51,333 nucleotides of DNA from Macrostomum lignano (taxonomy: Eukaryota): assembly GCA_002269645.1 (NCBI GenBank), contig NIVC01001243.1, forward strand, positions 1-51,333, read 5' to 3'. Numbering within the stretch: the stretch's first letter is position 1; every line of letters begins with the position of its first letter. Of the stretch, positions 18,065 through 51,320 are shown piece by piece. The translations under genes were made by a program, and so were the position numbers. The notes under the pieces were generated by a model. That model did no database searches. It saw nothing but the letters and a program-made list of their open reading frames with translations, and had not been told where the DNA came from.

Positions 18065-18077
18065 ATGCCAGTCTCAC

Positions 18078-24311: not shown

Positions 24312-24594
24312 CAAAGCTTTGCCTCTGCTGCTGCATCCGCCTGGGATCCGAGGGCCTCGCGACGCCGCCGGGTCCTCCTCTGGCGGCGCTGGCATCGCCG
24401 CCTGGACCTGCCGGTCCCCTGCCCAACATGTCGATGCCCCAGCCGCCGACAGTGTCGATTTTAAAAAAATCTGCCGCCTCGTCTCGATTAGCGAATTTCT
24501 CCTGATCGTACCGACTGTACGCCAGGTGCTGCGTTGGTCGCTGCTGGTGCGCGGGATTCGAACCCACCGACTGGCGCGAATGCTGGTGATGATG
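24312..24594 (-). CDS. CDC73: Parafibromin exon 4
   Basis: CTGCAG|CAT ... TTT G|GTGAGG; AYSRYDQEKF...FKIDT matches YNRYDQERF...FKIDT. Confidence 0.88.
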
Positions 24595-24666
24595 CTGCAG
24601 GTTTGGAGCAGGAGAAATTCGTTAGTTTAAGGGTCTGATCGGAGAGATACTGCACTCGAAACTAGG

Positions 24667-25281: not shown

Positions 25282-25360
25282 GGATCTGGAAGGCTGGCCC
25301 GTAAACCTAGTCTATCAAATCAAGTCAAACTATGACCTCAACTCGCTCAGACAGACTTAC

Positions 25361-25684
25361 ACCTCCAGAAGCAGTCACAGCGGACGAGTTAGCAATGGCA
25401 TTGGCGCCCTCCTCGCGCGCTCGCACGGCCCGCAGCACGCCATTGAGCACAGAGTCGGCAAAGTTTCTCGTTGCCGCCTGCAGACAGGAATTCCTGTCGC
25501 GATGCAGTCGCTCGCGCGACACGAGATCGCGTAACAGGCTAAGATCTTCGCTGAAAAAGCTGCCCCCGATGGCGCCAGAATCGGCGCCAGCCAGGGCGCC
25601 GCCGCTCTCGTCCGGTTTGATGCTGTCACGAATTTTCACTCGGCGCTTCGCTCGGAGAGCGTGGATTTTCTCGATTGTCATCAC
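25361..25684 (-). CDS. CDC73: Parafibromin exon 3
   Basis: TCCAG|GTG ATG ACA ATC GAG AAA ATC ... GGT|GTAAGT; EKIHALRAKR, DIVSRER-like LVSRERLHRDRNSCLQ. Confidence 0.88.
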
Positions 25685-25717
25685 CTGGAGATTCGCGAGT
25701 TGGGACAGTGAGGGCGA

Positions 25718-26010
25718 TTAATCATGATTAGATAATTAGGGCAATTGATAATAATTAGATTATGACGGCAATAAAGATGATTAGATTATCAGGGCATTTA
25801 ATGATAATTATATAATCAGAGCAATTAATGATCATTACATAATGAAGGCAAAAAAGATGATTAGATAATACCGGCAAAAAGATTAGATAATGAGGGCAAT
25901 TCATGATAATTAGATATGAAGGGCGATTAATAATGATTAGATAATGAGGGAAATTACTGATGATTAGAAAATGACGGCAAAAAAGATAATTAGATAATGA
26001 GGGCAACAAT
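25718..26010. repeat. Degenerate AT-rich ~21-30-bp repeat (GATAATTAGATAATGAGGGCAAT); CDC73 intron 2
   Basis: Recurrent ATTAGATAATGA motif fills almost the whole intron. Confidence 0.8.
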
Positions 26011-26023
26011 AACATATTTATAC

Positions 26024-29900: not shown

Positions 29901-30364
29901 TATTGTTTTCATGCTTTATATTGTTGAATAAATAAGAAAAAACCACAAAAAATCATTTTGAAAGTCCGAGTTGACCAATTTGCAATTTTTTGTTTCATTT
30001 TTTTCATTATTAAACAATTAATTTTAAGACTTGTAGGCCTTAGAGAAGGCTAATTTTTTTACTACTTACAAAACAGAAAGTAATCTGTGTTTTACTTTTT
30101 ATTCAATTCAAAAAGATGAAGTATTTCTAAGGATTTCAAAGTTTTTCTAAAACCATATAAACTCGCAAAAAAACATACTAATATAAAGTGCAAAGTTTGC
30201 CAGCAAACATCTTTCTCTCAAAGTAAATATATCGCTAATTCCTTGTTGCAAAATAATCTTTAAGTTGTTTTCTTTCATTTAAATATCAACTTGCATAGTA
30301 TGAGTATTTGTAATATGCCTATATTTAGACTTAAAAATTTTGGGTAAAAAATGGTACCACAAAA

Positions 30365-31070
30365 TGTGAACCCGGCATCCAAATCAGATGCTTACTGTAT
30401 GCTTATTAAGCAACGAAGAACAATGAAATTACACTAAAACATGTATCATTGCGGTGTATATGCAGGAAAAAAAGAATTTTACAAATCGCTTTAGTAGAAG
30501 CTGAGTAAAATGCAATTTTCCAATCCTTATGGGAATTCCAATGTGTTACCCGGCTTCCAAATCAGATGCTTACTGTATGCTCATTAAGCGACGAAGAACA
30601 ACAAAATTACACTAAAACATGTATCATCGCGGCGTGTATGCAGGAAAAAAAGAATTTTCCAAATCGCTTTAGTAGAAGCTGAGTAAAATGCAATTTTCCA
30701 ATCCTTATGGGAATTCCAATGTGTTACCTGGCTTCCAAATCAGATGCTTACTGTGTGCTCATTAAGCGACGAAGAACAACGAAATTACACTAAAACATGT
30801 ATCATCGCGGCGTGTATGCAGGAAAAAAAGAATTTTACAAATCGCTTTAGTAGAAGCTGAGTAAAATGCAATTTTCCAATCCTTATGGGAATTCCAATGT
30901 GTTACCCGGCTTCCAAATCAGATGCTTACTGTATGCTCATTAAGCGACAAGGAACAATGAAATTACACTAAAACATGTATCATCGCGGCGTGTATGCAGG
31001 AAAAAAAGAATTTTCCAAATCGCTTTAGTAGAAGCTGAATAAAATGCAATTTTCTGATCCTTACGGGAAT
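30365..31070. repeat. 178-bp tandem repeat, ~4 copies
   Basis: CCAAATCAGATG at 30379, 30557, 30735, 30913. Confidence 0.93.
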
Positions 31071-32337
31071 TTGTATGTTTAAATAATAAACTTTAAATGT
31101 TGAACACAATTTATTGCAAACAAACTCTACAAAATACATGTTGTCAAGAGTAACGAAAGTGATAAACAAATAAACCCTTGAAAATAATGTTAAATAGGGT
31201 AAGATCTCATCAACCGAACAAGGGATCTTCAAAACCGAACATGCAAGTGACTTTCGTTTTTACTGTCTCATTGGAAATATATTTAAAGAGTCTATAAAAG
31301 TGCCATATCATTTGAAAGAAAACATTCTCATCTACAAAATGAGATAAAGTTTAGACAATCTACTCAATAGATACTCGAGAAAATGAGCATTATTGATAGA
31401 AATTATTAAAGAAATACGCGTTTCAGAGTTTTTTCTTGATTTGGGATGTCTGCAGAAGAATTGGTCTACAGACCACAATTTTTAACTTACATTCAAAACA
31501 AAATACTTTTTGAATTCAGTGTTAAATTTTCTACAAAGTAATATAACACACATACCAATCTGATGTATAGTTAAGCAAAAAATTCTAGTGTTCGGTTGAT
31601 GATACCAAATTACATGTTCGGTTCGGTTTTCAGATTTCAGAATCATCAACCGAACAGAAGAATCTTCAAAACCGAACGAACAAAAATTGTCCAAAAAAAC
31701 TTATTTCTCGCTTGATTCTTCTACCTTACATTGAATAAGATCTTTTTTTTAAAAGAACAACTCATTTAAGCCACGTAATTGCAAATATTTTTTGCTTAAA
31801 AATGTACCAATTTTAATGCAAAATACATAGGAGGATTTTTCCATTTTGACAAAATATTCCTATTAAATGCTTTTATTTCTACTAACAGTAGCTAAAAGCG
31901 ACATATAATTCCATATACATTTTCTTTTAAGAATTCTGCAACATAGAAAAGAAGATCGAATCAACAAGACAGGCCAAGATAGGCGCGGCCTACTAGGCCT
32001 AATGGTTGCCGCTTTACTGTATAATTGAAGAGTAAAAGGCCTAGTAAACGTCTAATTTAATTTAATTGTAAATAAGTACAATTACGAGTATTGTAACTGT
32101 AAGTAATACGAGCAAAGCCAAAGGCACAATATAAAATTTAATAATATGACTACAATAATATACATTTAGTAAAACCCTTATTAGAAAAGAAACAGATATA
32201 TGCTAGGCTATAGGCCTAGGCCCTATCAGAACGGGGAAATTTCAAAGATCTGACAAATTATATGATGGTAGGACGGAGAACTATACAAGGCGGTGAAGAG
32301 TCGCCTACTCCCAGATATATTAATAGACAAATGCAGA

Positions 32338-35300
32338 GAGGCGCCCTTAATACATGTAGATTGATGGACAGAAGCAGTTAGAGAGGCGCCCTTCATACAT
32401 GTAGATTGATGGACAGAAGCAGTTAGAGAGGCGCCCTTCATACATGTAGATTGATGGACAGAAACAGTTAGAGAGGCGCCCTTCATACATGTAGATTGAT
32501 GGACAGAAGCAGTTAGAGAGCGCCCTTGATCCAAGTAGATTGATAGACAGAAGCAGTTAGAGAGGCGCCATTCATACATGTAGATTGATAGACAGAAGCA
32601 GTTAGAGAGGCGCCCTTCATACATGTAGATTGATAGACAGAAGCAGTTAGAGAGGCGCCCTTCATACATGTAGATTGATAGACAGAAGCAGTTAGAGAGG
32701 CGCCCTTCATACATGTAGATTGATAGACAGAAGCAGTTAGAGAGGCGCCCTTCATACATGTAGATTGATGGACAGAATTCGCAGTTAGAGAGGCGCCATT
32801 CATACATGTAGATTGATGGACAGAAGCAGTTAGAGAGGCGCCCTTCATACATGTAGATTGATAGACAGAAGCAGTTAGAGAGGCGCCCTTCATACATGTA
32901 GATTGATAGACAGAAACAGTTAAAGAGGCGCCCTTCATACAAGTAGATTGATAGACAGAAGCAGTTAGAGAGGCGCCCTTCATACATGTAGATTGATGGA
33001 AAGAATTCGCAGTTAGAGAGGCGCCCTTCATACAAGTAGATTGATGGACAGAATTCGCAGTTAGAGAGGCGCCATTCATACATGTAGATTGATGGACAGA
33101 AGCAGTTAGAGAGGCGCCCTTCATACATGTAGATTGATGGACAGAAGCAGTTAGAGAGGCGCCCTTCATACATGTAGATTGATAGACAGAAGCAGTTAGA
33201 GAGGCGCCCTTCATACATGTAGATTGATAGACAGAAGCAGTTAGAGAGGCGCCATTCATACATGTAGATTGATAGACAGAAGCAGTTAGAGAGGCGCCCT
33301 TCATACAAGTAGATTGATGGACAGAATTCGCAGTTAGAGAGGCGCCATTCATACATGTAGATTGATGGACAGAATTCGCAGTTAGAGAGGCGCCCTTCAT
33401 ACATGTAGATTGATGGACAGAAGCAGTTAGAGAGGCGCCCTTCATACATGTAGATTGATGCAGGACAGAAGCAGTTAGAGAGGCGCCCTTCATACAAGTA
33501 GATTGATGGACAGAAGCAGTTAGAGAGGCGCCCTTCATACATGTAGATTGATGGACGGAAGCAGTTAGAGAGGCGCCCTTCATACATGTAGATTGATGGA
33601 CAGAAGCAGTTAGAGAGGCGCCCTTGATCCAAGTAGATTGATAGACAGAAGCAGTTAGAGAGGCGCCCTTCATACATGTAGATTGATGGACAGAAGCAGT
33701 TAGAGAGGCGCCCTTCATACATGTAGATTGATAGACAGAAGCAGTTAGAGAGGCGCCCTTCATACATGTAGATTGATGGACAGAATTCGCAGTTAGAGAG
33801 GCGCCCTTCATACATGTAGATTGATAGACAGAAGCAGTTAGAGAGGCGCCCTTCATACATGTAGATTGATGGACAGAAGCAGTTAGAGAGGCGCCCTTGA
33901 TCCAAGTAGATTGATAGACAGAAGCAGTTAGAGAGGCGCCCTTGATCCAAGTAGATTGATAGACAGAAGCAGTTAGAGAGGCGCCCTTCATACATGTAGA
34001 TTGATGGACAGAAGCAGTTAGAGAGCGCCCTTGATCCAAGTAGATTGATAGACAGAAGCAGTTAGAGAGGCGCCATTCATACATGTAGATTGATAGACAG
34101 AAGCAGTTAGAGAGGCGCCCTTCATACAAGTAGATTGATGGACAGAATTCGCAGTTAGAGAGGCGCCCTTCATACATGTAGATTGATGGACAGAAGCAGT
34201 TAGAGAGGCGCCCTTGATCCAAGTAGATTGATAGACAGAAGCAGTTAGAGAGGCGCCCTTGATCCAAGTAGATTGATAGACAGAAGCAGTTAGAGAGGCG
34301 CCCTTGATCCAAGTAGATTGATAGACAGAAGCAGTTAGAGAGGCGCCCTTCATACATGTAGATTGATGGACAGATGCAGTTAGAGAGGCGCCCTTCATAC
34401 ATGTAGATTGATGGACAGAAGCAGTTAGAGAGGCGCCCTTGATCCAAGTAGATTGATAGACAGAAGCAGTTAGAGAGGCGCCCTTGATCCAAGTAGATTG
34501 ATAGACAGAAGCAGTTAGAGAGGCGCCCTTGATCCAAGTAGATTGATAGACAGAAGCAGTTAGAGAGGCGCCCTTCATACATGTAGATTGATGGACAGAA
34601 GCAGTTAGAGAGGCGCCCTTCATACATGTAGATTGATGGACAGAAGCAGTTAGAGAGGCGCCCTTCATACATGTAGATTGATGGACAGAAGCAGTTAGAG
34701 AGGCGCCTTTCATACATGTAGATTGATGGACAGAAGCAGTTAGAGAGGCGCCCTTCATACATGTAGATTGATGGACAGAAGCAGTTAGAGAGGCGCCCTT
34801 CATACATGTAGATTGATGGACAGAAGCAGTTAGAGAGGCGCCTTTCATACATGTAGATTGATGGACAGAAGCAGTTAGAGAGGCGCCCTTCATACATGTA
34901 GATTGATGGACAGAAGCAGTTAGAGAGGCGCCCTTGATCCAAGTAGATTGATAGACAGAAGCAGTTAGAGAGGCGCCCTTGATCCAAGTAGATTGATAGA
35001 CAGAAGCAGTTAGAGAGGCGCCCTTCATACAAGTAGATTGATGGACAGAATTCGCAGTTAGAGAGGCGCCCTTCATACATGTAGATTGATGGACAGAAGC
35101 AGTTAGAGAGGCGCCCTTGATCCAAGTAGATTGATAGACAGAAGCAGTTAGAGAGGCGCCCTTGATCCAAGTAGATTGATAGACAGAAGCAGTTAGAGAG
35201 GCGCCCTTCATACATGTAGATTGATGGACAGAAGCAGTTAGAGAGGCGCCCTTCATACATGTAGATTGATGGACAGAAGCAGTTAGAGAGGCGCCCTTCA

Positions 35301-38300
35301 TACATGTAGATTGATGGACAGAAGCAGTTAGAGAGGCGCCTTTCATACATGTAGATTGATGGACAGAAGCAGTTAGAGAGGCGCCCTTCATACATGTAGA
35401 TTGATGGAAAGAATTCGCAGTTAGAGAGGCGCCCTTCATACATGTAGATTGATGGACAGAAGCAGTTAGAGAGGCGCCCTTCATACATGTAGATTGATAG
35501 ACAGAAGCAGTTAGAGAGGCGCCCTTGATCCAAGTAGATTGATAGACAGAAGCAGTTAGAGAGGCGCCCTTGATCCAAGTAGATTGATAGACAGAAGCAG
35601 TTAGAGAGGCGCCCTTCATACAAGTAGATTGATGGACAGAATTCGCAGTTAGAGAGGCGCCCTTCATACATGTAGATTGATGGACAGAAGCAGTTAGAGA
35701 GGCGCCCTTGATCCAAGTAGATTGATAGACAGAAGCAGTTAGAGAGGCGCCCTTGATCCAAGTAGATTGATAGACAGAAGCAGTTAGAGAGGCGCCCTTC
35801 ATACATGTAGATTGATGGACAGAAGCAGTTAGAGAGGCGCCCTTCATACATGTAGATTGATGGACAGAAGCAGTTAGAGAGGCGCCCTTCATACAAGTAG
35901 ATTGATGGACAGAATTCGCAGTTAGAGAGGCGCCCTTCATACATGTAGATTGATGGACAGAAGCAGTTAGAGAGGCGCCATTCATACATGTAGATTGATA
36001 GACAGAAGCAGTTAGAGAGGCGCCCTTGATCCAAGTAGATTGATAGACAGAAGCAGTTAGAGAGGCGCCCTTCATACATGTAGATTGATGGACAGAAGCA
36101 GTTAGAGAGGCGCCCTTCATACATGTAGATTGATGGACAGAAGCAGTTAGAGAGGCGCCCTTGATCAAGTAGATTGATAGACAGAAGCAGTTAGAGAGGC
36201 GCCCTTCATACATGTAGATTGATGGACAGAAGCAGTTAGAGAGGCACCCTTCATACATGTAGATTGATGGACAGAAGCAGTTAGAGAGGCGCCCTTCATA
36301 CATGTAGATTGATGGACAGAAGCAGTTAGAGAGGCGCCTTTCATACATGTAGATTGATGGACAGAAGCAGTTAGAGAGGCGCCCTTCATACATGTAGATT
36401 GATGGACAGAAGCAGTTAGAGAGGCGCCCTTCATACATGTAGATTGATGGACAGAAGCAGTTAGAGAGGCGCCCTTCATACATGTAGATTGATAGACAGA
36501 AGCAGTTAGAGAGGCGCCCTTGATCCAAGTAGATTGATAGACAGAAGCAGTTAGAGAGGCGCCCTTGATCCAAGTAGATTGATAGACAGAAGCAGTTAGA
36601 GAGGCGCCCTTCATACAAGTAGATTGATGGACAGAATTCGCAGTTAGAGAGGCGCCCTTCATACATGTAGATTGATGGACAGAAGCAGTTAGAGAGGCGC
36701 CCTTGATCCAAGTAGATTGATAGACAGAAGCAGTTAGAGAGGCGCCCTTGATCCAAGTAGATTGATAGACAGAAGCAGTTAGAGAGGCGCCCTTCATACA
36801 TGTAGATTGATGGACAGAAGCAGTTAGAGAGGCGCCCTTCATACATGTAGATTGATGGACAGAAGCAGTTAGAGAGGCGCCCTTCATACATGTAGATTGA
36901 TGGACAGAAGCAGTTAGAGAGGCGCCTTTCATACATGTAGATTGATGGACAGAAGCAGTTAGAGAGGCGCCCTTCATACATGTAGATTGATGGACAGAAG
37001 CAGTTAGAGAGGCGCCCTTCATACATGTAGATTGATGGACAGAAGCAGTTAGAGAGGCGCCCTTCATACATGTAGATTGATAGACAGAAGCAGTTAGAGA
37101 GGCGCCCTTGATCCAAGTAGATTGATAGACAGAAGCAGTTAGAGAGGCGCCCTTGATCCAAGTAGATTGATAGACAGAAGCAGTTAGAGAGGCGCCCTTC
37201 ATACAAGTAGATTGATGGACAGAATTCGCAGTTAGAGAGGCGCCCTTCATACATGTAGATTGATGGACAGAAGCAGTTAGAGAGGCGCCCTTGATCCAAG
37301 TAGATTGATAGACAGAAGCAGTTAGAGAGGCGCCCTTGATCCAAGTAGATTGATAGACAGAAGCAGTTAGAGAGGCGCCCTTCATACATGTAGATTGATG
37401 GACAGAAGCAGTTAGAGAGGCGCCCTTCATACATGTAGATTGATGGACAGAAGCAGTTAGAGAGGCGCCCTTCATACATGTAGATTGATGGACAGAAGCA
37501 GTTAGAGAGGCGCCTTTCATACATGTAGATTGATGGACAGAAGCAGTTAGAGAGGCGCCCTTGATCCAAGTAGATTGATAGACAGAAGCAGTTAGAGAGG
37601 CGCCCTTGATCCAAGTAGATTGATAGACAGAAGCAGTTAGAGAGGCGCCCTTCATACATGTAGATTGATGGACAGAAGCAGTTAGAGAGGCGCCCTTCAT
37701 ACATGTAGATTGATGGACAGAAGCAGTTAGAGAGGCGCCCTTGATCCAAGTAGATTGATAGACAGAAGCAGTTAGAGAGGCGCCCTTCATACATGTAGAT
37801 TGATGGACAGAAGCAGTTAGAGAGGCCCCTTCATACATGTAGATTGATGGACAGAAGCAGTTAGAGAGGCGCCCTTCATACATGTAGATTGATGGACAGA
37901 AGCAGTTAGAGAGGCGCCCTTCATACATGTAGATTGATGGACAGAAGCAGTTAGAGAGGCGCCCTTCATACATGTAGATTGATAGACAGAAGCAGTTAGA
38001 GAGGCGCCCTTGATCCAAGTAGATTGATAGACAGAAGCAGTTAGAGAGGCGCCCTTGATCCAAGTAGATTGATAGACAGAAGCAGTTAGAGAGGCGCCCT
38101 TCATACAAGTAGATTGATGGACAGAAGCAGTTAGAGAGGCGCCCTTCATACATGTAGATTGATGGACAGAAGCAGTTAGAGAGGCGCCATTCATACATGT
38201 AGATTGATAGACAGAAGCAGTTAGAGAGGCGCCCTTGATCCAAGTAGATTGATAGACAGAAGCAGTTAGAGAGGCGCCCTTCATACATGTAGATTGATAG

Positions 38301-41238
38301 ACAGAAGCAGTTAGAGAGGCGCCCTTGATCCAAGTAGATTGATAGACAGAAGCAGTTAGAGAGGCGCCCTTCATACATGTAGATTGATGGACAGAAGCAG
38401 TTAGAGAGGCGCCCTTGATCCAAGTAGATTGATAGACAGAAGCAGTTAGAGAGGCGCCCTTCATACAAGTAGATTGATGGACAGAAGCAGTTAGAGAGGC
38501 GCCCTTCATACATGTAGATTGATGGACAGAAGCAGTTAGAGAGGCGCCCTTGATCCAAGTAGATTGATAGACAGAAGCAGTTAGAGAGGCGCCCTTGATC
38601 CAAGTAGATTGATAGACAGAAGCAGTTAGAGAGGCGCCCTTGATCCAAGTAGATTGATAGACAGAAGCAGTTAGAGAGGCGCCCTTGATCCAAGTAGATT
38701 GATAGACAGAAGCAGTTAGAGAGGCGCCCTTCATACATGTAGATTGATGGACAGATGCAGTTAGAGAGGCGCCCTTCATACATGTAGATTGATGGACAGA
38801 AGCAGTTAGAGAGGCGCCCTTGATCCAAGTAGATTGATAGACAGAAGCAGTTAGAGAGGCGCCCTTGATCCAAGTAGATTGATAGACAGAAGCAGTTAGA
38901 GAGGCGCCCTTGATCCAAGTAGATTGATAGACAGAAGCAGTTAGAGAGGCGCCCTTCATACATGTAGATTGATGGACAGAAGCAGTTAGAGAGGCGCCCT
39001 TCATACATGTAGATTGATGGACAGAAGCAGTTAGAGAGGCGCCCTTCATACATGTAGATTGATGGACAGAAGCAGTTAGAGAGGCGCCTTTCATACATGT
39101 AGATTGATGGACAGAAGCAGTTAGAGAGGCGCCCTTCATACATGTAGATTGATGGACAGAAGCAGTTAGAGAGGCGCCCTTCATACATGTAGATTGATGG
39201 ACAGAAGCAGTTAGAGAGGCGCCCTTCATACATGTAGATTGATAGACAGAAGCAGTTAGAGAGGCGCCCTTGATCCAAGTAGATTGATAGACAGAAGCAG
39301 TTAGAGAGGCGCCCTTGATCCAAGTAGATTGATAGACAGAAGCAGTTAGAGAGGCGCCCTTCATACAAGTAGATTGATGGACAGAATTCGCAGTTAGAGA
39401 GGCGCCCTTCATACATGTAGATTGATGGACAGAAGCAGTTAGAGAGGCGCCCTTGATCCAAGTAGATTGATAGACAGAAGCAGTTAGAGAGGCGCCCTTG
39501 ATCCAAGTAGATTGATAGACAGAAGCAGTTAGAGAGGCGCCCTTCATACATGTAGATTGATGGACAGAAGCAGTTAGAGAGGCGCCCTTCATACATGTAG
39601 ATTGATGGACAGAAGCAGTTAGAGAGGCGCCCTTCATACATGTAGATTGATGGACAGAAGCAGTTAGAGAGGCGCCTTTCATACATGTAGATTGATGGAC
39701 AGAAGCAGTTAGAGAGGCGCCCTTGATCCAAGTAGATTGATAGACAGAAGCAGTTAGAGAGGCGCCCTTGATCCAAGTAGATTGATAGACAGAAGCAGTT
39801 AGAGAGGCGCCCTTCATACATGTAGATTGATGGACAGAAGCAGTTAGAGAGGCGCCCTTCATACATGTAGATTGATGGACAGAAGCAGTTAGAGAGGCGC
39901 CCTTGATCCAAGTAGATTGATAGACAGAAGCAGTTAGAGAGGCGCCCTTCATACATGTAGATTGATGGACAGAAGCAGTTAGAGAGGCACCCTTCATACA
40001 TGTAGATTGATGGACAGAAGCAGTTAGAGAGGCGCCCTTCATACATGTAGATTGATGGACAGAAGCAGTTAGAGAGGCGCCCTTCATACATGTAGATTGA
40101 TGGACAGAAGCAGTTAGAGAGGCGCCATTCATACATGTAGATTGATAGACAGAAGCAGTTAGAGAGGCGCCCTTGATCCAAGTAGATTGATAGACAGAAG
40201 CAGTTAGAGAGGCGCCCTTGATCCAAGTAGATTGATAGACAGAAGCAGTTAGAGAGGCGCCCTTCATACAAGTAGATTGATGGACAGAATTCGCAGTTAG
40301 AGAGGCGCCCTTCATACATGTAGATTGATGGACAGAAGCAGTTAGAGAGGCGCCATTCATACATGTAGATTGATAGACAGAAGCAGTTAGAGAGGCGCCC
40401 TTGATCCAAGTAGATTGATAGACAGAAGCAGTTAGAGAGGCGCCCTTCATACATGTAGATTGATGGACAGAAGCAGTTAGAGAGGCGCCCTTGATCCAAG
40501 TAGATTGATAGACAGAAGCAGTTAGAGAGGCGCCCTTGATCCAAGTAGATTGATAGACAGAAGCAGTTAGAGAGGCGCCCTTCATACAAGTAGATTGATG
40601 GACAGAATTCGCAGTTAGAGAGGCGCCCTTCATACATGTAGATTGATGGACAGAAGCAGTTAGAGAGGCGCCCTTGATCCAAGTAGATTGATAGACAGAA
40701 GCAGTTAGAGAGGCGCCCTTGATCCAAGTAGATTGATAGACAGAAGCAGTTAGAGAGGCGCCCTTGATCCAAGTAGATTGATAGACAGAAGCAGTTAGAG
40801 AGGCGCCCTTCATACATGTAGATTGATGGACAGATGCAGTTAGAGAGGCGCCCTTCATACATGTAGATTGATGGACAGAAGCAGTTAGAGAGGCGCCCTT
40901 GATCCAAGTAGATTGATAGACAGAAGCAGTTAGAGAGGCGCCCTTGATCCAAGTAGATTGATAGACAGAAGCAGTTAGAGAGGCACCCTTGATCCAAGTA
41001 GATTGATAGACAGAAGCAGTTAGAGAGGCGCCCTTGATCCAAGTAGATTGATAGACAGAAGCAGTTAGAGAGGCACCCTTGATCCAAGTAGATTGATAGA
41101 CAGAAGCAGTTAGAGAGGCACCCTTGATCCAAGTAGATTGATAGACAGAAGCAGTTAGAGAGGCGCCCTTGATCCAAGTAGATTGATAGACAGAAGCAGT
41201 TAGAGAGGCACCCTTGATCCAAGTAGATTGATAGACAG
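32338..41238. repeat. 45-bp satellite (AGAGGCGCCCTTCATACATGTAGATTGATGGACAGAAGCAGTTAG), ~197 copies, with 48-bp and B-type variants
   Basis: Direct periodicity; source of the 589-1685 aa MYEGRLSNCFCPSIY and STCMKGASLTASVHQ ORFs. Confidence 0.97.
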
Positions 41239-41684
41239 ACTCCCTGTAAGCCTGTTTTTTGAAAATTGAATGGAAAATAGGTTTGATATTATTGTAAAAG
41301 TTTAATGTACTTTACCTTAAAAGCTGGTTGTCAATTGATAGGCGTTACTCAAGAGCTTTACTACAGCTAGATATATTTCCAAAATGGCCTAAATGATAAC
41401 AAGACTTGGATAAATACTCAGGGCCTAGCCTTCTTAGAGCTAGCCTATGCCTAGTTTTAAAGCTGGCCTGTAGTGAGGAAATACTAGGCCTACCAATGTA
41501 AGAGTCAGCCTACTTGAGCTGTGGGATTTCAAACCAGCCAATAGGAACCAGACAGCGAATTTTTACTCTTGGATGACTAACGCGAATTCTCACATTCACA
41601 TGCCACAGCCAGGCTCCATATCCTTATTTTTGCGCAGAACTAGGACCATTGCGCGTACGTCGGCCTAGGCCTCATCAATACAAC

Positions 41685-41959
41685 CAGTGGCGGCGCCAAG
41701 TTGGGGGCAGAGAGGGCTGCTGCCCCCGGGTGACCACCCTCCTAAGACCACCCTACCATCCTTCCGTGGGGTGACCCACCATTAGTTTTTTAGCGCTCGT
41801 TGTATGCGTTTTTGTGAGATTATAGCGTATACTCTAATTTTAAAAATTCGCTGAGGGAGGGGTTTGAAAACCCAACCACCGCCCCTCCCCCTTAATCCAC
41901 AGAATTTACCTTAATCAGCATCGCCGCCACTGCGCACCGCCAAGGCTGCACCGCCACTA
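41685..41959. mobile_element. hAT-type MITE
   Basis: Ends CAGTGGCGG ... CCGCCACTA; near-perfect 8-bp TSD AATACAAC (41677-41684) / AATAGAAC (41960-41967). Confidence 0.65.
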
Positions 41960-42282
41960 AATAGAACCAACATTAATGGGCATATCGAAAGAAAATATAC
42001 ATTTGGCCTATCGGAAATTTCAGTCACTAGGGCCTAAAGCAAAACGTAGGCCTATAGTACTCGTATAGGCCTAAAACACCTTGTTTAAAGATTAGTAATT
42101 GAAGATACATATCTACATAACTTAATAAACTCTAATTTGTACCTAAACTCCTAATTTTCTCCGAGAACTCATCCTAGATTTATGGCTATCAATTACTAAC
42201 TACCGTAATTAGCCCTAATTGGTTGTTCTGGTCAATTACGCGAAAGAGCGAAAGAGCGAAATGGTTTCTGTATTTTAAAGTT

Positions 42283-44510
42283 AAAATGCTGAGCTAGGCC
42301 AAACTCAGCTCATTCTGAATTCATGATAGACTCAGGTGCTGGGATACACAGAGACAGTTAGAGAAGGAATCAGCCGGTTTGATGAAGATTATAGCGGCTC
42401 TCAAGTCCTCTCTGTGTTTGAGTGAAAATGCTGAGCTAGGCCAAACTCAGCTCATTCTGAATTCATGATAGACTCAGGTGCTGGGATACACAGAGACAGT
42501 TAGAGAAGGAATCAGCCGGTTTGATGAAGATTATAGCGGCTCTCAAGTCCTCTCTGTGTTTGAGTGAAAATGCTGAGCTAGGCCAAACTCAGCTCATTCT
42601 GAATTCATGATAGACTCAGGTGCTGGGATACACAGAGACAGTTAGAGAAGGAATCAGCCGGTTTGATGAAGATTATAGCGGCTCTCAAGTCCTCTGTGTT
42701 TGAGTGAAAATGCTGAGCTAGGCCAAACTCAGCTCATTCTGAATTCATGATAGACTCAGGTGCTGGGACACACAGAGACAGTTAGAGAAGGAATCAGCCG
42801 GTTTGATGAAGATTATAGCGGCTCTCAAGTCCTCTCTGTGTTTGAGTGAAAATGCTGAGCTAGGCCAAACTCAGCTCATTCTGAATTCATGATAGACTCA
42901 GGTGCTGGGATACACAGAGACAGTTAGAGAAGGAATCAGCCGGTTTGATGAAGATTATAGCGGCTCTCAAGTCCTCTCTGTGTTTGAGTGAAAATGCTGA
43001 GCTAGGCCAAACTCAGCTCATTCTGAATTCATGATAGACTCAGGTGCTGGGATACACAGAGACAGTTAGAGAAGGAATCAGCCGGTTTGATGAAGATTAT
43101 AGCGGCTCTCAAGTCCTCTCTGTGTTTGAGTGAAAATGCTGAGCTAGGCCAAACTCAGCTCATTCTGAATTCATGATAGACTCAGGTGCTGGGATACACA
43201 GAGACAGTTAGAGAAGGAATCAGCCGGTTTGATGAAGATTATAGCGGCTCTCAAGTCCTCTCTGTGTTTGAGTGAAAATGCTGAGCTAGGCCAAACTCAG
43301 CTCATTCTGAATTCATGATAGACTCAGGTGCTGGGATACACAGAGACAGTTAGAGAAGGAATCAGCCGGTTTGATGAAGATTATAGCGGCTCTCAAGTCC
43401 TCTCTGTGTTTGAGTGAAAATGCTGAGCTAGGCCAAACTCAGCTCATTCTGAATTCATGATAGACTCAGGTGCTGGGATACACAGAGACAGTTAGAGAAG
43501 GAATCAGCCGGTTTGATGAAGATTATAGCGGCTCTCAAGTCCTCTCTGTGTTTGAGTGAAAATGCTGAGCTAGGCCAAACTCAGCTCATTCTGAATTCAT
43601 GATAGACTCAGGTGCTGGGATACACAGAGACAGTTAGAGAAGGAATCAGCCGGTTTGATGAAGATTATAGCGGCTCTCAAGTCCTCTCTGTGTTTGAGTG
43701 AAAATGCTGAGCTAGGCCAAACTCAGCTCATTCTGAATTCATGATAGACTCAGGTGCTGGGATACACAGAGACAGTTAGAGAAGGAATCAGCCGGTTTGA
43801 TGAAGATTATAGCGGCTCTCAAGTCCTCTCTGTGTTTGAGTGAAAATGCTGAGCTAGGCCAAACTCAGCTCATTCTGAATTCATGATAGACTCAGGTGCT
43901 GGGATACACAGAGACAGTTAGAGAAGGAATCAGCCGGTTTGATGAAGATTATAGCGGCTCTCAAGTCCTCTCTGTGTTTGAGTGAAAATGCTGAGCTAGG
44001 CCAAACTCAGCTCATTCTGAATTCATGATAGACTCAGGTGCTGGGATACACAGAGACAGTTAGAGAAGGAATCAGCCGGTTTGATGAAGATTATAGCGGC
44101 TCTCAAGTCCTCTGTGTTTGAGTGAAAATGCTGAGCTAGGCCAAACTCAGCTCATTCTGAATTCATGATAGACTCAGGTGCTGGGACACACAGAGACAGT
44201 TAGAGAAGGAATCAGCCGGTTTGATGAAGATTATAGCGGCTCTCAAGTCCTCTGTGTGTTTGAGTGAAAATGCTGAGCTAGGCCAAACTCAGCTCATTCT
44301 GAATTCATGATAGACTCAGGTGCTGGGATACACAGAGACAGTTAGAGAAGGAATCAGCCGGTTTGATGAAGATTATAGCGGCTCTCAAGTCCTCTGTGTT
44401 TGAGTGAAAATGCTGAGCTAGGCCAAACTCAGCTCATTCTGAATTCATGATAGACTCAGGTGCTGGGATACACAGAGACAGTTAGAGAAGGAATCAGCCG
44501 GTTTGATGAA
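42283..44510. repeat. 142-bp satellite, ~15.7 near-identical copies
   Basis: AAAATGCTGAGC at 42283 and 42425 onward; a few copies lack one CT (140 bp). Confidence 0.97.
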
Positions 44511-45267
44511 GAGACTAGCTAGCTATAGCTTTTATATACTCAAAGGTGCTTTTGGGTCCAATCTAATCACTTTGACCTTAGCTTATCTAAAATCTTACCT
44601 AAGAGGGCCCCACAAAAAGTAGGCAAACTTTTACGCAAACAAAAAGTATGAAATCTTTCAGTCCTTTTACGAATTGATGAGTGGCCGAAGCTGCCTTGGG
44701 CAATTCCATCTTCACACCCGTGCCAAAACATAGACAACGTGTGCGAATTGAGCCGATTTTCGAGTTACTTTTTACTCGTAGGTGCGAAAAATTGGGTGAC
44801 AGACGGTTTGCGATAAGGGCTGTGTCTATTAATTCATTTTTACTGGGAACCGAATTTAAATTCGCACATTTTAAGTCCGTAGGATTAGGCTCAAATTCTA
44901 AGCACGATTTTTCGCACCCAATAGTCAAGTATTGGTCTATTGTCTAGAATCCCAGACCCTGGGCCTTTTCTGAGGCAATAGGCGGCATGATCCACCTATC
45001 CTTATCTCTGACTATCGACTGTTTTGCAAAATTCGGTTTGTTTTCGCACTTCGTGGTGAGCCTGGAACCAATTCGCGCACATTTTAGACATGATGGGCCT
45101 AACGAAGCGCCAGAAGCATTATGTCATAACTTCACGCCCTTTCCACGAAGTAAATAAATGATATGGCCTAAATAGCGACCGCAATGAAGCGAGAGAGATA
45201 AATCCATGCTTTGCATGCAGCATCCCGTTCATACTCCTGTTGCTCAATTTTGATATTTATTTTTAGA

Positions 45268-46465
45268 AGGAGCAGATGGAAAGAAAAAAGCAGATGGAGA
45301 GGAAGAGGCGGATGCAGAGGAAGGGCGGATGCAGAGGAAGGGATGGATGAAGAGGAAGGGATGGAATCAGAGGAAGGGCAGATGCAGAGGAAGGGGCGGA
45401 TGCAGAGGAAGGGCGGATGCAGAGGAAGGGCGGGTGTAGAGGAAGGGGCAGATGCAGAGAAGGGCGGATGCAGAGGAAGGGGCGGATGCAGAGGAAGGGC
45501 GGATGCAGAGGAAGGGCGGGTGTAGAGGAAGGGGCAGATGCAGAGGAAGGGCGGATGCAGAGGAAGGGGCGGATGCAGAGGAAGGGCGGATGCAGAGGAA
45601 GGGCGGATGCAGAGGAAGGGATGGATGAAGAGGAAGGGATGGAATCAGAGGAAGGGATGGAATCAGAGGAAGGGCGGATGCAGAGGAAGGGCGGATGCAG
45701 AGGAAGGGATGGAATCAGAGGAAGGGATGGAATCAGAGGAAGGGCGGATGCAGAGGAAGGGGCGGGTGCAGAGGAAGGGGCGGATGCAGAGGAAGGGGCG
45801 GATGCAGAGGAAGGGCGGATGCAGAGGAAGGGCGGATGCAGAGGAAGGGCGGGTGTAGAGGAAGGGGCAGATGCAGAGGAAGGGCGGATGCAGAGGAAGG
45901 GGCGGATGCAGAGGAAGGCGGATGCAGAGGAAGGGCGGGTGTAGAGGAAGGGGCAGATGCAGAGGAAGGGATGCATGCAGAGGAAGGGCGGATGCAGAGG
46001 AAGGGCGGATGCAGAGGAAGGGGCAGATGCAGAGGAAGGGATGCATGCAGAGGAAGGGCGGATGCAGAGGAAGGGATGGAATCAGAGGAAGGGCAGATGC
46101 AGAGGAAGGGCGGGTGTAAAGGAAGGGGCGGATGCAGAGGAAGGGGCGGATGCAGAGGAAGGGCGGATGCAGAGGAAGGCGGATGCAGAGGAAGGGCGGA
46201 TGCAGAGGAAGGGCGGGTGTAGAGGAAGGGGCGGATGCAGAGGAAGGGATGCATGCAGAGGAAGGCGGATGCAGAGGAAGGGATGCATGCAGAGGAAGGG
46301 CGGATGCAGAGGAAGGGATGGAATCAGAGGAAGGGCAGATGCAGAGGAAGGGCGGGTGTAGAGGAAGGGGCGGATGCAGAGGAAGGGCAGATGCAGAGGA
46401 AGGGCGGATGCAGAGGAAGGGCAGATGCAGAGGAAGGGCGGATGCAGAGGAAGGGGCGGATGGAA
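45268..46465. repeat. 17-19-bp purine-rich minisatellite (GGCGGATGCAGAGGAAGG), ~65 copies
   Basis: Direct; source of ADAEEG/MQRKGG/HPFLC pseudo-ORFs. Confidence 0.95.
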
Positions 46466-47009
46466 AAGGAGTGGATAGGGAGAAAGGATCCGCTGGCTTA
46501 TTCTAGTCCCAGTGTCAGCAGATTTAAGCATAAAAAATCCTTTGGCTGATCCAGAATTTGGGATTCCAACTGTAAATAAAAAAGCGCTACATATAGATGT
46601 GGCCAGAGTGAGAGATGGATAATTCCCATCTAAAGTTCTTGCATCCAGATTTCAAAAACTGAACGACGAGGAGAAAATTTGGCCTACGCAGACATGACCA
46701 GTTTTCCTCGTGCTGTCATTGGTTAGCCGAATTCCTTGCGCAGTCATGAGGATTGGCTGTTTCTGTTTGCTTTCCTGCGGCACCAATCAACTTTCCAACG
46801 TCCATTCATGCGTTTAAAATATTTGAATCAGGTTAAAAACCAATTGGCCCTAGCTACGTTAGACATTTGATTTTCAAGGCTCATCAATATCAACTGACAT
46901 CTGCAACATCGTTTCGAGATCGGACATCCGGATTACTGCTGCCTTCGCGAAACGCTTAAAAATTTTGCTTCTAATTATTGACTTTGTATTCATAGTCTAC
47001 GTTAACGGC

Positions 47010-47692
47010 CTCTCTATCTCTCCATCAGCCGCCGTCTACTCTCTATCAGCCGCCCGTCTCCTCTCTATCAGCCGCCCGTCTCCTCTCTATCAGCCGCCCG
47101 TCTCCTCTCTATCAGCTGCCTGTCTCCTCTCTATCAGCCGCCCGTCTCCTCTCTATCAGCCGCTTGTCTATCTCCTCTCTATAAGCTGCCTGTCTCCTCT
47201 CTATCAGCCGCCCGTCTCCTCTCTATCAGCCGCTTGTCTATCTCCTCTCTATAAGCTGCCTGTCTGTCTCCTCTCTATCAGCCGCCCGTCTCCTCTCTAT
47301 CAGCCGCCCGTCTCCTTTCTATCAGCCGCTTGTCTATCTCCTCTCTATCAGCTTTCTGTCTCCTCTCTATCAGCCGCCCGTCTCCTCTCTATCAGCCGCT
47401 TGTCTATCTCCTCTCTATCAGCGGCTTGTCTCCTCTCTATCAGCCGCCTGCCTGTCTCCTCTTTATCAGCTTTCTGTCTATCTCCACTCTATCAGCCGCC
47501 CGTCTCCCCTCTATCAGCCACCCGTCTCCTCTCTATCAGCCGCCCGTCTCCTCTCTATCAGCCGCCCGTCTCCTCTCTATCAGCCGCCCGTCTCCTCTCT
47601 ATCAGCCGCCTGCCTGTCTCCTCTCTATCAGCTGCCTGTCTATCTCCTCTCTATCAGCTGCCTGTCTATCTCCTCTCTATCAGCTCTCTATC
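47010..47692. repeat. 22-26-bp pyrimidine-rich minisatellite (TCTCCTCTCTATCAGCCGCCCG), ~29 copies
   Basis: Direct. Confidence 0.93.
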
Positions 47693-48537
47693 AGATTTTG
47701 AATATTTATTGCGAGCTTTTTCTTTCTTGTCTTTGCAAAAATCTACATGTATACAAGGCTGGGGTAAACAGATGAAGCCAATGAGCCTATGGTTTTGGCG
47801 GTCCACCTTGTTGCAGTGATTGCAGTTTGAGAACGAGGTGATGGTTTTCTGGAAAATTTTAAGAATCCACAGCATTTTTTCTTCACATCTTGCATGCGAC
47901 TACTTGAAGTAAAAATTTACGAGTATGATGAGAAAAAATAATATAAAATTACAAGAACTTGTTGCAAAAAAAATCGTTTTTTTACAATTTTTACTTTTCT
48001 TTATTCTTCTTCCTTAAGTTTTGAAAAATATTAACTATATGATAAAAAAAGGTTAAAAGTATACTAGAGGTACTTTTTCTTTCAAAAACAAGGTAATAAT
48101 GCCAAATAAATGCTTATGTTGAAAGCTGAAACATTAGTAGGTCCTTCAGAAGAACTCCGAAATGGCAAAGTATCAGCTCTGCTTTAAAGAACTTGTGTTT
48201 TTTTAAAATTCTTTAATGCTTTTCCGATTTGACTGTCTAAATAAGTAGAAAAATATGGCTTTTTATCAATTTAGCATGAAAGAGTTTAAAGAAATGGCAA
48301 AAAGGTAAAAATCACGATTTTTCATTCAATGGGGGTACTCTATTCAAATGCAGATAAACAATATTTTTCTACATTTATCTAAGCGAAAGTTATACTTTTT
48401 AGAAAGAGTATGTAATCTTTACATGAATATAATTATTAGAAAAAACGAACGAGAAATAAAAAGTTATTAGTGTCAAACACAAAAACCGAAACGTCAGATA
48501 CTGTTCGGTTTGAAGATACCCTAGAATCATCGTTCGG

Positions 48538-48830
48538 TTGAGATAAAATCATCAATAACTTTTTTTCTACTTGTGCAATAAAGTAAAGCAAACATTCATT
48601 TGAAAGAAAAAATGTTTTAAACAACTTCGGAGTTTTCATTTTATTACACATTAAACTTTTTTTGCTATCTATGAGAGAATGTTTGAGATAAAATCATCAA
48701 TAACTTTTTTTCTACTTGTGCAATAAAGTAAAGCAAACATTCATTTGAAAGAAAAAAATGTTTTAAACAACTTCGGAGTAGTTTCATTTTATTACACATT
48801 AAACTTTTTTTGCTATCTATGAGAGAATGT
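48538..48830. repeat. ~145-bp tandem duplication just inside the right TIR
   Basis: TTGAGATAAAATC...GAGAGAATGT at 48538-48682 and 48683-48830. Confidence 0.9.
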
Positions 48831-49420
48831 CGAAAAATGACACTTTCATGTTCGGTTGATGAGATCTTACCCTATGTTGTATAATTATAGAGTGTAACAT
48901 TATAAGATAGTTAAAGTTATTAAAATACATTATTATAGCTTTTCTATCATTTTCATTAGACTCATTTTAGGTCGTAATTAAACTTACCGTTTTAACAAAT
49001 CATTTTATTAAAAATAAAGCTATACAAAAATAATTTGTGCTTTAATAGACTTTTTTACCTTTTAAAAACTTGAATAAATTTATTTTATAGCTTTATTGCT
49101 TTCAAATTGCCAAAAAAACGAATTTTCATAAAACTTGCCCCTGATTTTTGGATTTCACCATTATCAATGAAAATGGTAACATACAATTATTGTAAAAAGA
49201 TTTATATTTTTTACTTGACAAATTTCAAAAGCAAGATGTCTTTTTATCCAGGCAAATAAATTTTATCAAATACAGTTAAAAAGTACTAATAAAATAACTA
49301 GGCCTATCAAAATCTCACTGGGCTGGAGTCCCTACTTATGGTTATACTCAACTTAAATGGGAATAAAGATTACATACTACCATCTAATATACTAAATACA
49401 GACATACTAAATTTACTTAC

Positions 49421-49551
49421 CCCCATATAATGTAATTAGTCTTTGTACTCTTAGGATAGGCAAAGTCTCCAAAGATAACTTCATCATCTTTTTCTACTAT
49501 TTCTTTATTTTTTATAGTGTAGTCTCGAATTATTGAAAGAACATCAGCCAT
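49421..49551 (-). CDS. CDC73: Parafibromin exon 1 ([44 protein letters not shown])
   Basis: Hand-translated; canonical CDC73 N-terminus; 131 nt ending TGG GG|GTAAGT, phase 2, matching the phase-2 acceptor of exon 2. Not in the ORF track. Confidence 0.92.
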
Positions 49552-50165: not shown

Positions 50166-50455
50166 TAGAGTTCCAGCACTGGAACCCATTTTCTAATAGC
50201 TATGGATCGGGCAGTCTTCTGCAGGCAGTTATCTACTAATACTAATGACATCTTTGAACATTAGAAGTATCTTCTTTTGAATCTCATCATTTTGTTTTGA
50301 TCTCAGGCCCTATTTTGAACAAAATCTCAATATAAACCACCTGTCAAAAATTAAAATGTTTCTGCTATATTATACCCATAAACTGCACTACAGGAATACC
50401 ATTGCTAGATCCAAAGCCATTAAAAATGGGTTCCAATGCCAGAACTGGAACTCTA
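50166..50455. mobile_element. MITE with ~45-bp imperfect TIRs, TA at both ends
   Basis: TAGAGTTCCAGCACTGGAACCCATTTTCTAATAGCTATGGATC vs reverse complement of right end TAGAGTTCCAGTTCTGGCATTGGAACCCATTTTTAATGGCTTTGGATC. Confidence 0.7.
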
Positions 50456-50662: not shown

Positions 50663-51320
50663 GGTGCGCAGTCATTTCGTCTGCCGCCTTTTCGTCTGCC
50701 GGCAGACAAAACGACTTTTTAAAATAAGTAGCAAAATAAGTTTTATAAATGGCTGAAATTAATTTATAGTTTATTTTTAATACTTATAATTTACTAGTAA
50801 TTTTCAGATTTAGAATTAGATGTAGTCTTTGTATTTTTTATTTTGCTTATCGCAATGTTTCCAAGAAATACAATTATTCGTATATAAGCTTTAATTGAAT
50901 CTACGTAGTGAGCTATGAATGGGATTTATAATTTGTGCGCGTGTAACCTACTTATAATAAGTAAAATAATTCCAACTCGACTAATTGCTTTTGAGCTTTG
51001 AAGCTTTGAGACGGTTAAGAGATAGTATGGCGTCTGCCATATCATGACGAAAATGCATTGAATTCGTTCAATTGCGTAGTTTAATAAATATAAAAAAATA
51101 TTTAGAAATTTACTCGTTTAAGTCATTACTACTAAGAAATGATCCCAATATCTTAGTCATTGTTATCTTAAATATCTCAAATCTCAAATTAATGACAACA
51201 ACTGACATATTTACACTTATTAAAACTTTATTGTTCGTTGGCAGACGAAACAACTGTATCGTATTCTTGCAGACGAAAGGGTGGCAGACGAACTGGCGGC
51301 AGACGAAACAACCGTCACGC
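50663..51320. mobile_element. Non-autonomous TIR element with subterminal TTCGTCTGCC repeats and 8-bp TSD
   Basis: Left GGTGCGCAGTCATTTCGTCTGCCGCC, right GGCGGCAGACGAAACAACCGTCACGC; CTTTTGAA at 50655-50662 and 51321-51328. Confidence 0.75.

What the first reader, a model, noticed from the sequence alone, without database searches (positions are those of the whole stretch)
31195..48874. Candidate 17.7-kb satellite-carrying DNA transposon that built most of CDC73 intron 1
Seen: exact 26-nt inverted match TA-GGGTAAGATCTCATCAACCGAACA at 31195-31220 and 48849-48874. An inner motif CAACCGAAC..ATCTTCAAA(A)CCGAAC occurs at ~31211 and ~31647 (+) and ~48502-48540 (-), like the IR/DR layout of some Tc1-type elements. 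I found no partner end near either terminus. Between them lie four different satellites (45, 142, 18, 22 bp; ~13 kb) and a nested hAT MITE, with no transposase. Established: TA duplication typifies Tc1/mariner and some ISL2EU elements, and TE-borne satellites are known, but usually one array in a short element. Inference: a giant non-autonomous element acting as a multi-satellite nursery or vector, accounting for ~78% of the intron.
Basis: partly seen in the sequence, partly recalled or inferred. Interest (0 to 1): 0.75.

Follow-up and report, generated by a model that had tools for sequence, protein, structure and literature searches.

The report
Transposon ends bracketing an intron's satellites
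Two matching, inward-facing ends of a DNA transposon really do bracket 17.7 kb of tandem repeats in the first intron of CDC73, but such repeats fill all the neighbouring non-coding DNA too, so this is most likely an ordinary non-autonomous transposon swollen in place, not a proven satellite carrier.

Summary
An exact 24-nt inverted repeat (27 nt with the flanking ATA/TAT) sits at 31197-31220 and 48849-48872, and TA abuts each end. Shuffles expect zero such matches. Nine copies of a ~17-25-nt unit ending in AACCGAAC lie within 490 bp of the left end and 375 bp of the right end, and nowhere else in 51 kb. Between the ends lie four arrays (45, 142, 17 and 22 bp; 13.0 kb), a hAT-like MITE and no transposase. 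The span covers 77.9% of CDC73 intron 1.

TA can equally be read as AT, and it does not separate one insertion from two. The arms share nothing beyond the motifs, so this is not a true IR/DR element. CDC73 introns 2-4 and the adjacent intergenic region are also 48-89% minisatellite.

No other copy, empty site or autonomous partner could be found, because the source genome is absent from every searchable collection. My best reading is one non-autonomous TA-flanked element whose core expanded in place (0.5).

The parts
31195..31196 (.). TA dinucleotide abutting the left end (candidate target-site duplication; can also be read as AT at 31194-31195)
31197..31220 (+). Left terminal inverted repeat GGGTAAGATCTCATCAACCGAACA (first repeat unit)
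31221..31251 (+). Second tandem unit AGGGATCTTCAAAACCGAACA, absent from the right end, followed by TGCAAGTGAC. That decamer matches TGAAAGTGTC at the right end 8/10.
   Evidence: read
31589..31633 (-). Cluster B: two units in inverted orientation, including the exact 14-nt repeat core. It lacks the outermost 10 nt of a true terminus.
31643..31678 (+). Cluster C: inner direct copy of the two-unit left terminus (91% over 35 nt)
31195..32200 (.). AT-rich left arm (27-34% GC), compositionally the same as the intron outside it
32335..41239 (.). 45-bp minisatellite, 197 copies, 94-95% identity at all offsets with a weak 587-bp higher-order period
41685..41959 (.). Nested hAT-like MITE with CAGTGGCGG... 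ends and an 8-bp duplication AATACAAC/AATAGAAC
42279..44512 (.). 142-bp satellite, 15.8 copies, 99% matches
45293..46462 (.). 17-bp (35-bp doublet) G-rich minisatellite, 67 copies
47018..47692 (.). 22-bp C-rich minisatellite, 28 copies
48477..48548 (-). Cluster D: two units, one preceded by TAGGGTA and followed by TGACGTTTCGGTTTTT. It resembles the left terminal 70 nt (79% over 43 nt). It is either an inner terminus-like repeat or a second right end.
48538..48830 (.). Tandem duplication of 145 bp inside the right arm (98% identity)
48839..48872 (-). Right terminal inverted repeat (24 nt exact, single unit) plus 10 nt that continue the match past the unit-number difference
48873..48874 (.). TA dinucleotide abutting the right end
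49421..49551 (-). Context: CDC73 exon 1 ([44 protein letters not shown]). Intron 1 runs 26730-49420.

Best explanation
The two ends mark one insertion of a non-autonomous cut-and-paste DNA transposon into a TA in CDC73 intron 1.

The element has 24-nt terminal inverted repeats. Each ~0.4-0.5-kb subterminal region carries several copies, direct and inverted, of a ~17-25-nt unit (consensus roughly AGGGTA..ATCTYMAHMAACCGAACA). I infer these units are binding sites for a transposase encoded elsewhere.

The ~1-kb AT-rich arms enclose a GC-richer core that is now about 83% tandem arrays. I infer that most of this bulk arose after insertion. It would have grown by the same local amplification (replication slippage and unequal exchange) that filled every other intron and the intergenic region nearby. 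A hAT-like MITE also inserted into the core.

On this reading the element did not move as a 17.7-kb satellite carrier.

Shown: the ends, the motif layout, the arrays, the absence of coding capacity and the array-rich neighbourhood.
Inferred: a single insertion, transposase binding, and growth in place.
For: - The exact 24-27-nt inverted ends are not chance.
- All 10 AACCGAAC motifs in 51 kb lie within 490 bp and 375 bp of the two ends, against 0.57 expected.
- The ends face inward. Their arms are not homologous to each other, as expected for the left and right arms of one asymmetric element. Two random solo ends would show this arrangement only about 1 time in 8.
- No +-oriented end lies near the right terminus, so the right end(s) must pair across the satellites or be orphans.
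- There is no coding capacity.
- Arrays make up 48-89% of CDC73 introns 2-4 and 55% of the intergenic region outside the element.
- The arrays are homogeneous (94-99%) and one has a weak higher-order period, which fits recent local amplification.
- The right arm itself carries a 98% tandem duplication of 145 bp, and the left terminus has one extra unit. Local duplication therefore acts on the element (read).
- A separate MITE has inserted into the core.
- Known precedents exist: MITEs whose internal repeat expands in copy number, such as miDNA4 and Xstir (PMC12628747).
Against: - No second copy of the family, no empty site and no autonomous partner could be examined, so a single insertion is not demonstrated.
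- TA is only 2 bp and is expected at every end of a TA-targeting family.
- The core (42-58% GC) differs in composition from the arms and flanks (25-33% GC), and the change lies ~1 kb inside each end. If the arrays had grown out of AT-rich arm DNA they should be AT-rich. The core could instead be original cargo or a later insertion.
- AT-rich parts of the same intron carry almost no arrays (only the 178-bp x4 repeat at 30363-31071).
- Cluster B and the TAGGGTA of cluster D allow other pairings of ends.
Confidence: 0.5

Rival explanations
1. Two independent, partial copies (solo ends) of one transposon family landed about 17 kb apart in the intron. The satellites between them are ordinary intron DNA that was never inside a transposon.
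For: - Arrays of the same kind fill the other introns and the intergenic region without any such ends.
- There is no GC step at either terminus, so the arms look like the surrounding intron.
- TA at each end is expected for any copy.
- Solo inverted repeats are very common for some Tc1/mariner families, for example MADE1/Hsmar1 in human (PMC5224488).
- Other MITE-like elements occupy the same AT-rich DNA.
Against: - It needs two truncations, each removing the inner half, plus inward orientation, plus one left-type and one right-type arm.
- The 24 terminal nt are identical.
- No other copy of the motif occurs anywhere else in 51 kb, so the family is not obviously dense here.
Confidence: 0.25
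2. A giant non-autonomous element already carried the four arrays when it inserted and can move them as a unit (a multi-satellite vector).
For: - The core is compositionally foreign to the AT-rich arms and flanks. It sits symmetrically, ~1.0 kb from each end, as cargo would.
- The ends are intact and identical.
- Helitron/Helentron elements of Crassostrea gigas carry different array types within one element (PMC12628747).
Against: - No second copy was found in any collection, including searches with the peptides that the arrays encode.
- The arrays are highly homogeneous, which fits recent local growth.
- Arrays are ubiquitous in the neighbouring non-coding DNA.
- Integration efficiency of Sleeping Beauty, a Tc1/mariner element, falls with transposon length (PMC4229213).
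- A nested MITE shows that the core keeps acquiring material in place.
Confidence: 0.15
3. The structure is composite. A short MITE runs from the left terminus to cluster B (31195 to about 31612). A second element starts at cluster C and ends at cluster D (48523) or at the right terminus.
For: - The exact 14-nt repeat core lies in inverted orientation at 31589-31602, followed by TACC. That matches the terminus if 5 nt are deleted.
- Cluster C repeats the two-unit terminus 91% over 35 nt.
- Cluster D carries TAGGGTA followed by TA, like a real end.
Against: - Cluster B lacks the outermost GGGTAAGATC, and cluster C lacks any GGGTAAG.
- No TA-flanked boundary can be drawn at either cluster.
- Sequence next to cluster B is unrelated to sequence next to the right terminus (read).
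- Even in this model, a right end still pairs with a left end across the satellites.
Confidence: 0.07

Closest known systems
Tc1/mariner non-autonomous elements, including the IR/DR subgroup (Sleeping Beauty, Tdr1)
   Same: TA directly flanks both ends. The element has terminal inverted repeats. Repeated site-like units occur at an outer and an inner position in the same orientation in each arm. The left arm has extra sites, as SB has its HDR (PMC5224488).
   Different: IR/DR elements have ~230-bp left and right repeats that match each other throughout. Here the arms match only in the terminal 24-37 nt and in the short units. The inner sites lie 310-440 bp in rather than ~170 bp. The terminus starts GGG, not the usual CAGT/CAGG type (my own knowledge). 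No transposase is available to confirm the superfamily.
miDNA4, a Tc1/mariner MITE of Xenopus with an internal satellite; also the Xstir MITE/tandem-array composites
   Same: A TA-type MITE whose internal tandem repeat varies from one monomer to longer arrays. Growth is proposed to happen inside the element (PMC12628747).
   Different: Those carry one repeat type in short elements, and the pattern is documented over many copies. Here there are four unrelated arrays totalling 13 kb in a single observed copy.
Helitron/Helentron elements of Crassostrea gigas with central arrays
   Same: Different types of tandem array occur within a single element, and the same arrays occur both inside and outside elements (PMC12628747).
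   Different: Helitrons have no terminal inverted repeats and use rolling-circle transposition. This element has exact inverted ends flanked by TA.
Tetris / foldback elements of Drosophila virilis
   Same: A non-autonomous DNA transposon that shares its ends with a MITE, contains tandem repeats and seeds kb-size arrays (PMC4079207).
   Different: Tetris repeats lie within long inverted arms. Here the arrays are not mirrored and the arms are unrelated.
En/Spm (CACTA) and Ac-type subterminal repeat regions
   Same: It works alike: many copies of a short motif, direct and inverted, confined to a few hundred bp at both ends, in elements that can be large (my own knowledge).
   Different: The termini are not CACTA. 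The 3-bp (CACTA) or 8-bp (hAT) duplications are absent (8-bp flanks match 2/8, read).

Membership tests
Tc1/mariner | TA target-site duplication | tested here: inconclusive
   TA abuts both ends. The palindromic ATA/TAT allows an AT reading too. Duplication cannot be shown without an empty site.
Tc1/mariner | Terminal inverted repeats | tested here: met
   24 nt are exact, and the match reaches 34 nt with 2 mismatches across a one-unit copy-number difference (read).
Tc1/mariner | DD(E/D) transposase in the element or in an autonomous relative sharing the ends | not testable with these tools
   This copy has no ORF with a Pfam match. The source genome is in no searchable collection.
Tc1/mariner IR/DR subgroup | Two transposase-site repeats in the same orientation in each arm | tested here: met
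   Left arm: 31205-31241 and 31643-31678 (+). Right arm: 48849-48866 and 48502-48548 (-). The left arm also has an extra inverted pair.
Tc1/mariner IR/DR subgroup | Long (~230 bp) left and right inverted repeats that match each other (PMC5224488) | tested here: not met
   Outside the terminal stretch, arm-arm local alignment is no better than shuffles: inverted score 16 against a shuffle mean of 16.6.
ISL2EU (PHIS superfamily) | AT duplication within an A|AT|T target (PMC4482050) | tested here: inconclusive
   Read as AT|AGGG...CCCT|AT, the left context A-AT fits but the right context AT-G does not.
ISL2EU (PHIS superfamily) | Inverted repeats usually begin GG (PMC4482050) | tested here: not met
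   Under the AT reading the repeat begins AG. It begins GG only under the TA reading, which is not the ISL2EU duplication.
Spy (PHIS superfamily) | No duplication, insertion between AAA and TTT, terminus GGANNNNG (PMC4122938) | tested here: not met
   The flanks are AAA / TGT if TA is counted as part of the element. The terminus would then be TAGGGTAA.
hAT | 8-bp target-site duplication | tested here: not met
   If the repeat is taken as TAGGG..., the flanks are ATGTTAAA and TGTTGTAT, matching 2/8 in register. TAGGG does fit the YARNG terminus (my own knowledge).
MITE | Short (hundreds of bp), non-coding, high copy number | tested here: not met
   It is non-coding but 17.7 kb long. Copy number is not testable. 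The arms alone (~0.9-2 kb) could descend from a MITE-sized element.
Foldback / Tetris-like | Long inverted arms built of tandem repeats | tested here: not met
   There is no inverted relation between arrays. The single inverted 45-mer-like monomer at 47730-47759 is matched by 6 of 100 shuffles.

The most novel reading that the evidence does not exclude
A 17.7-kb non-autonomous TA-flanked transposon moves as one unit and carries four unrelated satellite arrays. It would then seed whole multi-satellite blocks at new loci and create most of a long first intron in a single step.
Probability: 0.13. Interest if true: 0.6.

Novelty: new member of a known kind. Interest (0 to 1): 0.3.

Why it matters
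If the two ends are one insertion, one transposon plus local repeat growth accounts for 78% of a 22.7-kb first intron. This would be a concrete case of how introns lengthen.

The wider point is the genome itself. Nearly every non-coding stretch in this window is a minisatellite. That makes it a good system for asking whether transposons seed arrays or merely sit among them.

The vector version would add a multi-array TIR element to the known single-array MITEs and multi-array Helentrons. That is an extension of known biology, not a new principle.

Tried and rejected
1. Other copies by DNA:
- The 23-nt end and the two-unit motif were scanned in JGI metagenome contigs: nothing.
- The end was scanned in GTDB genome contigs, and its 18-nt core GATCTCATCAACCGAACA in IMG/VR: nothing.

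2. Other copies or the source genome by protein:
- The CDC73 C-terminus has a best hit of 61%, and the dynein tail 40%.
- Array-encoded peptides plus core ORFs gave no hit.
- An exact look-up of a 650-aa dynein ORF returned no record.
- So no empty-site or paralogue test was possible, and the organism stays unidentified. It looks like an animal without close sampled relatives.

3. A full-text search of papers for six diagnostic sequence strings found nothing.

4. Long inverted arms: rejected.

5. An inverted 45-mer monomer at 47730-47759, as a sign of a foldback core: 6 of 100 shuffles do as well.

6. Descent of the 17-mer and 22-mer arrays from the GGCAGACGAA repeats of the nearby MITE-like element: not above shuffles.

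7. Direct repeats at the two borders of the GC-rich core, as a duplication from a nested insertion: four shared 10-mers beat shuffles (P = 0.003). Real AT-rich control segments share 0-3, so this was rejected.

8. Flank similarity outside TA (14/23): judged an effect of post-hoc extension and AT-richness.

9. Rfam and tRNA scans: nothing.

10. Pfam on core ORFs: nothing credible.
Full report
**What is there**

The 24-mer GGGTAAGATCTCATCAACCGAACA occurs exactly twice in the 51,333-bp window. The sites are 31197-31220 (+) and 48849-48872 (-), with no match in any of 100 dinucleotide-preserving shuffles. Self-BLAST extends the inverted match to 27/27, 31194-31220 against 48875-48849. This is because both ends are abutted by TA and then by A on the left and T on the right.

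Reading the two ends side by side, the match continues past a difference in unit number. The left end reads ...CCGAACA[AGGGATCTTCAAAACCGAACA]TGCAAGTGAC. The right end reads ...CCGAACA-TGAAAGTGTC. So the left terminus carries two tandem copies of a ~21-25-nt unit and the right terminus carries one.

**The subterminal motif layout**

The octamer AACCGAAC occurs 10 times in the window, against 0.57 expected, and only in five clusters:
- A: 31205-31241 (+,+)
- B: 31589-31633 (-,-)
- C: 31643-31678 (+,+)
- D: 48502-48548 (-,-)
- E: 48849-48866 (-)

The 14-mer TCATCAACCGAACA is exact at 31207 (+), 31589 (-), 31643 (+) and 48849 (-). Cluster C repeats the two-unit left terminus at 91% over 35 nt.

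Cluster D reads, on the minus strand, TAGGGTA-TCTTCAAACCGAACA...TGACGTTTCGGTTTTT. It resembles the left terminal 70 nt at 79% over 43 nt and is followed by TA.

All nine units therefore lie within 490 bp of the left end or 375 bp of the right end, and none lies elsewhere.

The right arm also holds a 145-bp tandem duplication at 98% identity.

Apart from the terminal stretch and these units, the two arms are unrelated. Local alignment in either orientation does no better than block shuffles.

**The interior**

TRF reports four arrays totalling 12.97 kb:

| Unit | Copies | Coordinates | Matches |
|---|---|---|---|
| 45 bp | 197 | 32335-41239 | 95% |
| 142 bp | 15.8 | 42279-44512 | 99% |
| 17 bp | 67 | 45293-46462 | 86% |
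| 22 bp | 28 | 47018-47692 | 80% |

The 45-bp array is 93.5-95% identical at every offset, with a slight peak at 587 bp.

The arrays are unrelated to each other at BLAST sensitivity.

A 275-bp hAT-like MITE lies in one unique spacer at 41685-41959. It has CAGTGGCGG... ends and an 8-bp duplication matching 7/8.

No non-array ORF exceeds 114 aa, and none has a credible Pfam match. There are no Rfam families or tRNAs.

**Context**

The window carries two genes on the minus strand.
- An axonemal dynein heavy chain spans about 2709-18462.
- CDC73/parafibromin has exon 5 at 22661-23305, exon 4 at ~24274-24597 and exon 3 at 25331-25681. Exon 2 starts at 26729, and exon 1 is at 49421-49551.

Intron 1 runs 26730-49420, which is 22,691 bp.

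Two features of the neighbourhood change how the finding should be read.

First, minisatellites are everywhere outside the candidate element:
- Intron 2 is about 89% a 27-mer array.
- Intron 3 is about 86% a 28-mer array.
- Intron 4 is about 48% a 32-mer array.
- The dynein-CDC73 intergenic region is 55% arrays.

Second, GC content drops from 45-60% to 25-33% near position 27,000. There is no step at either terminus of the element. The steps lie about 1 kb inside each end, at ~32,200 and ~47,850. So the element has two ~1-kb AT-rich arms that look like the surrounding intron, and a 15.6-kb GC-richer core.

**One element or two?**

TA at both ends is expected for every copy of a TA-targeting family, so it does not discriminate.

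These points favour a single origin:
- The ends face each other.
- The arms are of two different kinds, as left and right arms of one asymmetric element would be.
- Neither D nor E has a +-oriented partner nearby.
- The motif is absent from the other 33 kb of the window.

These points weigh against certainty:
- B and the TAGGGTA of D permit other pairings.
- Solo ends are common in some Tc1/mariner families (PMC5224488).
- I could not obtain any second copy or empty site.

In every pairing model except 'orphan ends', a right end pairs with a left end across the satellites.

**Carried or grown in place?**

Growth in place is favoured by several observations:
- Arrays are ubiquitous in adjacent non-coding DNA.
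- The arrays are highly homogeneous.
- The arms themselves show local duplication (an extra terminal unit and the 145-bp duplication).
- A MITE has inserted into the core.
- MITEs whose internal repeat expands are documented, for example miDNA4 and Xstir (PMC12628747).

Cargo is favoured by two observations:
- The core's composition is foreign to the arms.
- The core sits symmetrically between the arms.

I put single insertion plus growth in place at 0.5. Two unrelated partial copies get 0.25, a true multi-satellite vector 0.15 and a composite of a short MITE plus a second element 0.07.

**Family**

The bases at the ends can be read as TA|GGG...CCC|TA or as AT|AGGG...CCCT|AT.
- ISL2EU makes AT duplications in an A|AT|T target, with repeats starting GG (PMC4482050). 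The AT reading gives a repeat starting AG and a right context of G.
- PIF (TWA) and Pangu (ANT) duplications do not fit.
- Spy inserts between AAA and TTT with a GGANNNNG terminus (PMC4122938), which does not fit.
- hAT needs an 8-bp duplication, and the flanks match 2/8.

TA plus inverted repeats fits Tc1/mariner best.

The outer and inner sites work like an IR/DR layout. However, the defining long matching inverted repeats are absent, so I do not file it as an IR/DR element. The many direct and inverted subterminal units resemble the subterminal repeat regions of En/Spm or Ac in function, though not in family.

**Limits**

The source genome and its close relatives are absent from every collection I could query.
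- The CDC73 best hit is 61% identical and the dynein tail 40%.
- No protein record exists for a 650-aa ORF of the window.
- Array-encoded peptides gave no hit.
- No DNA hit appeared in metagenome, prokaryotic-genome or viral contigs.
- No paper contains the diagnostic sequences.

**Verdict**

The 'one giant satellite-carrying transposon' reading is plausible in part but unproven. The satellite content is better explained as a property of this genome than of the element.

Novelty is modest: a new, unclassified TA-flanked TIR family of a known kind. Interest is 0.3.

Noticed in passing
window 23306-26017 and 18463-22660: CDC73 introns 2, 3 and 4 are about 89%, 86% and 48% minisatellite (27-, 28- and 32-bp units). 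The dynein-CDC73 intergenic region is 55% arrays (20-, 22-, 20- and 29-bp units). Short introns made almost wholly of one minisatellite are unusual and may be a genome-wide trait.
   Followed up: partly
window ~27000; exon 1 at 49421-49551: GC content falls abruptly from 45-60% to 25-33% inside CDC73. Exon 1 is AT-rich in codon choice, while exons 2-5 are GC-rich with Ala/Ser-rich low-complexity inserts. The cause is unknown.
   Followed up: no
window 50668-50712 and 51240-51308: A second MITE-like structure about 640 bp long lies upstream of CDC73 exon 1. Its arms are inverted clusters of GGCAGACGAA (7 copies). This is the same 'repeated short unit in both arms' style as the focal element.
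   Followed up: partly
window 50166-50192 and 50423-50455: A 24-33-nt inverted repeat (TAGAGTTCCAGCACTGGAACCCATTTT / AAAATGGGTTCCAATGCCAGAACTGGAACTCTA) with arms 230 nt apart. It is possibly another small MITE.
   Followed up: no
window 41685-41959: A hAT-like MITE (CAGTGGCGGCG... ends, 8-bp duplication AATACAAC/AATAGAAC) nested in a unique spacer of the core. A second internal copy of the right end lies at 41922-41932.
   Followed up: partly
window 31987-32217, 41386-42068, 45096-45165: The motif GGCCTA/TAGGCC (often as AGGCCTAG or GGCCTAGGCC) is concentrated in the unique spacers of the core and occurs once per 142-bp monomer. Its meaning is unknown.
   Followed up: no
window 30363-31071: A 178-bp repeat (x4, 95% identity) ends 124 bp before the left terminus. 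It is the only array in the AT-rich part of intron 1.
   Followed up: no
window 45293-46462 and 47018-47692: The G-rich 17-mer and C-rich 22-mer arrays have opposite strand skew. Their consensus units share GGGCGG.TG...AGAGGA when one is reverse-complemented, so they may be an old inverted duplication. BLAST finds no significant similarity between the arrays.
   Followed up: partly
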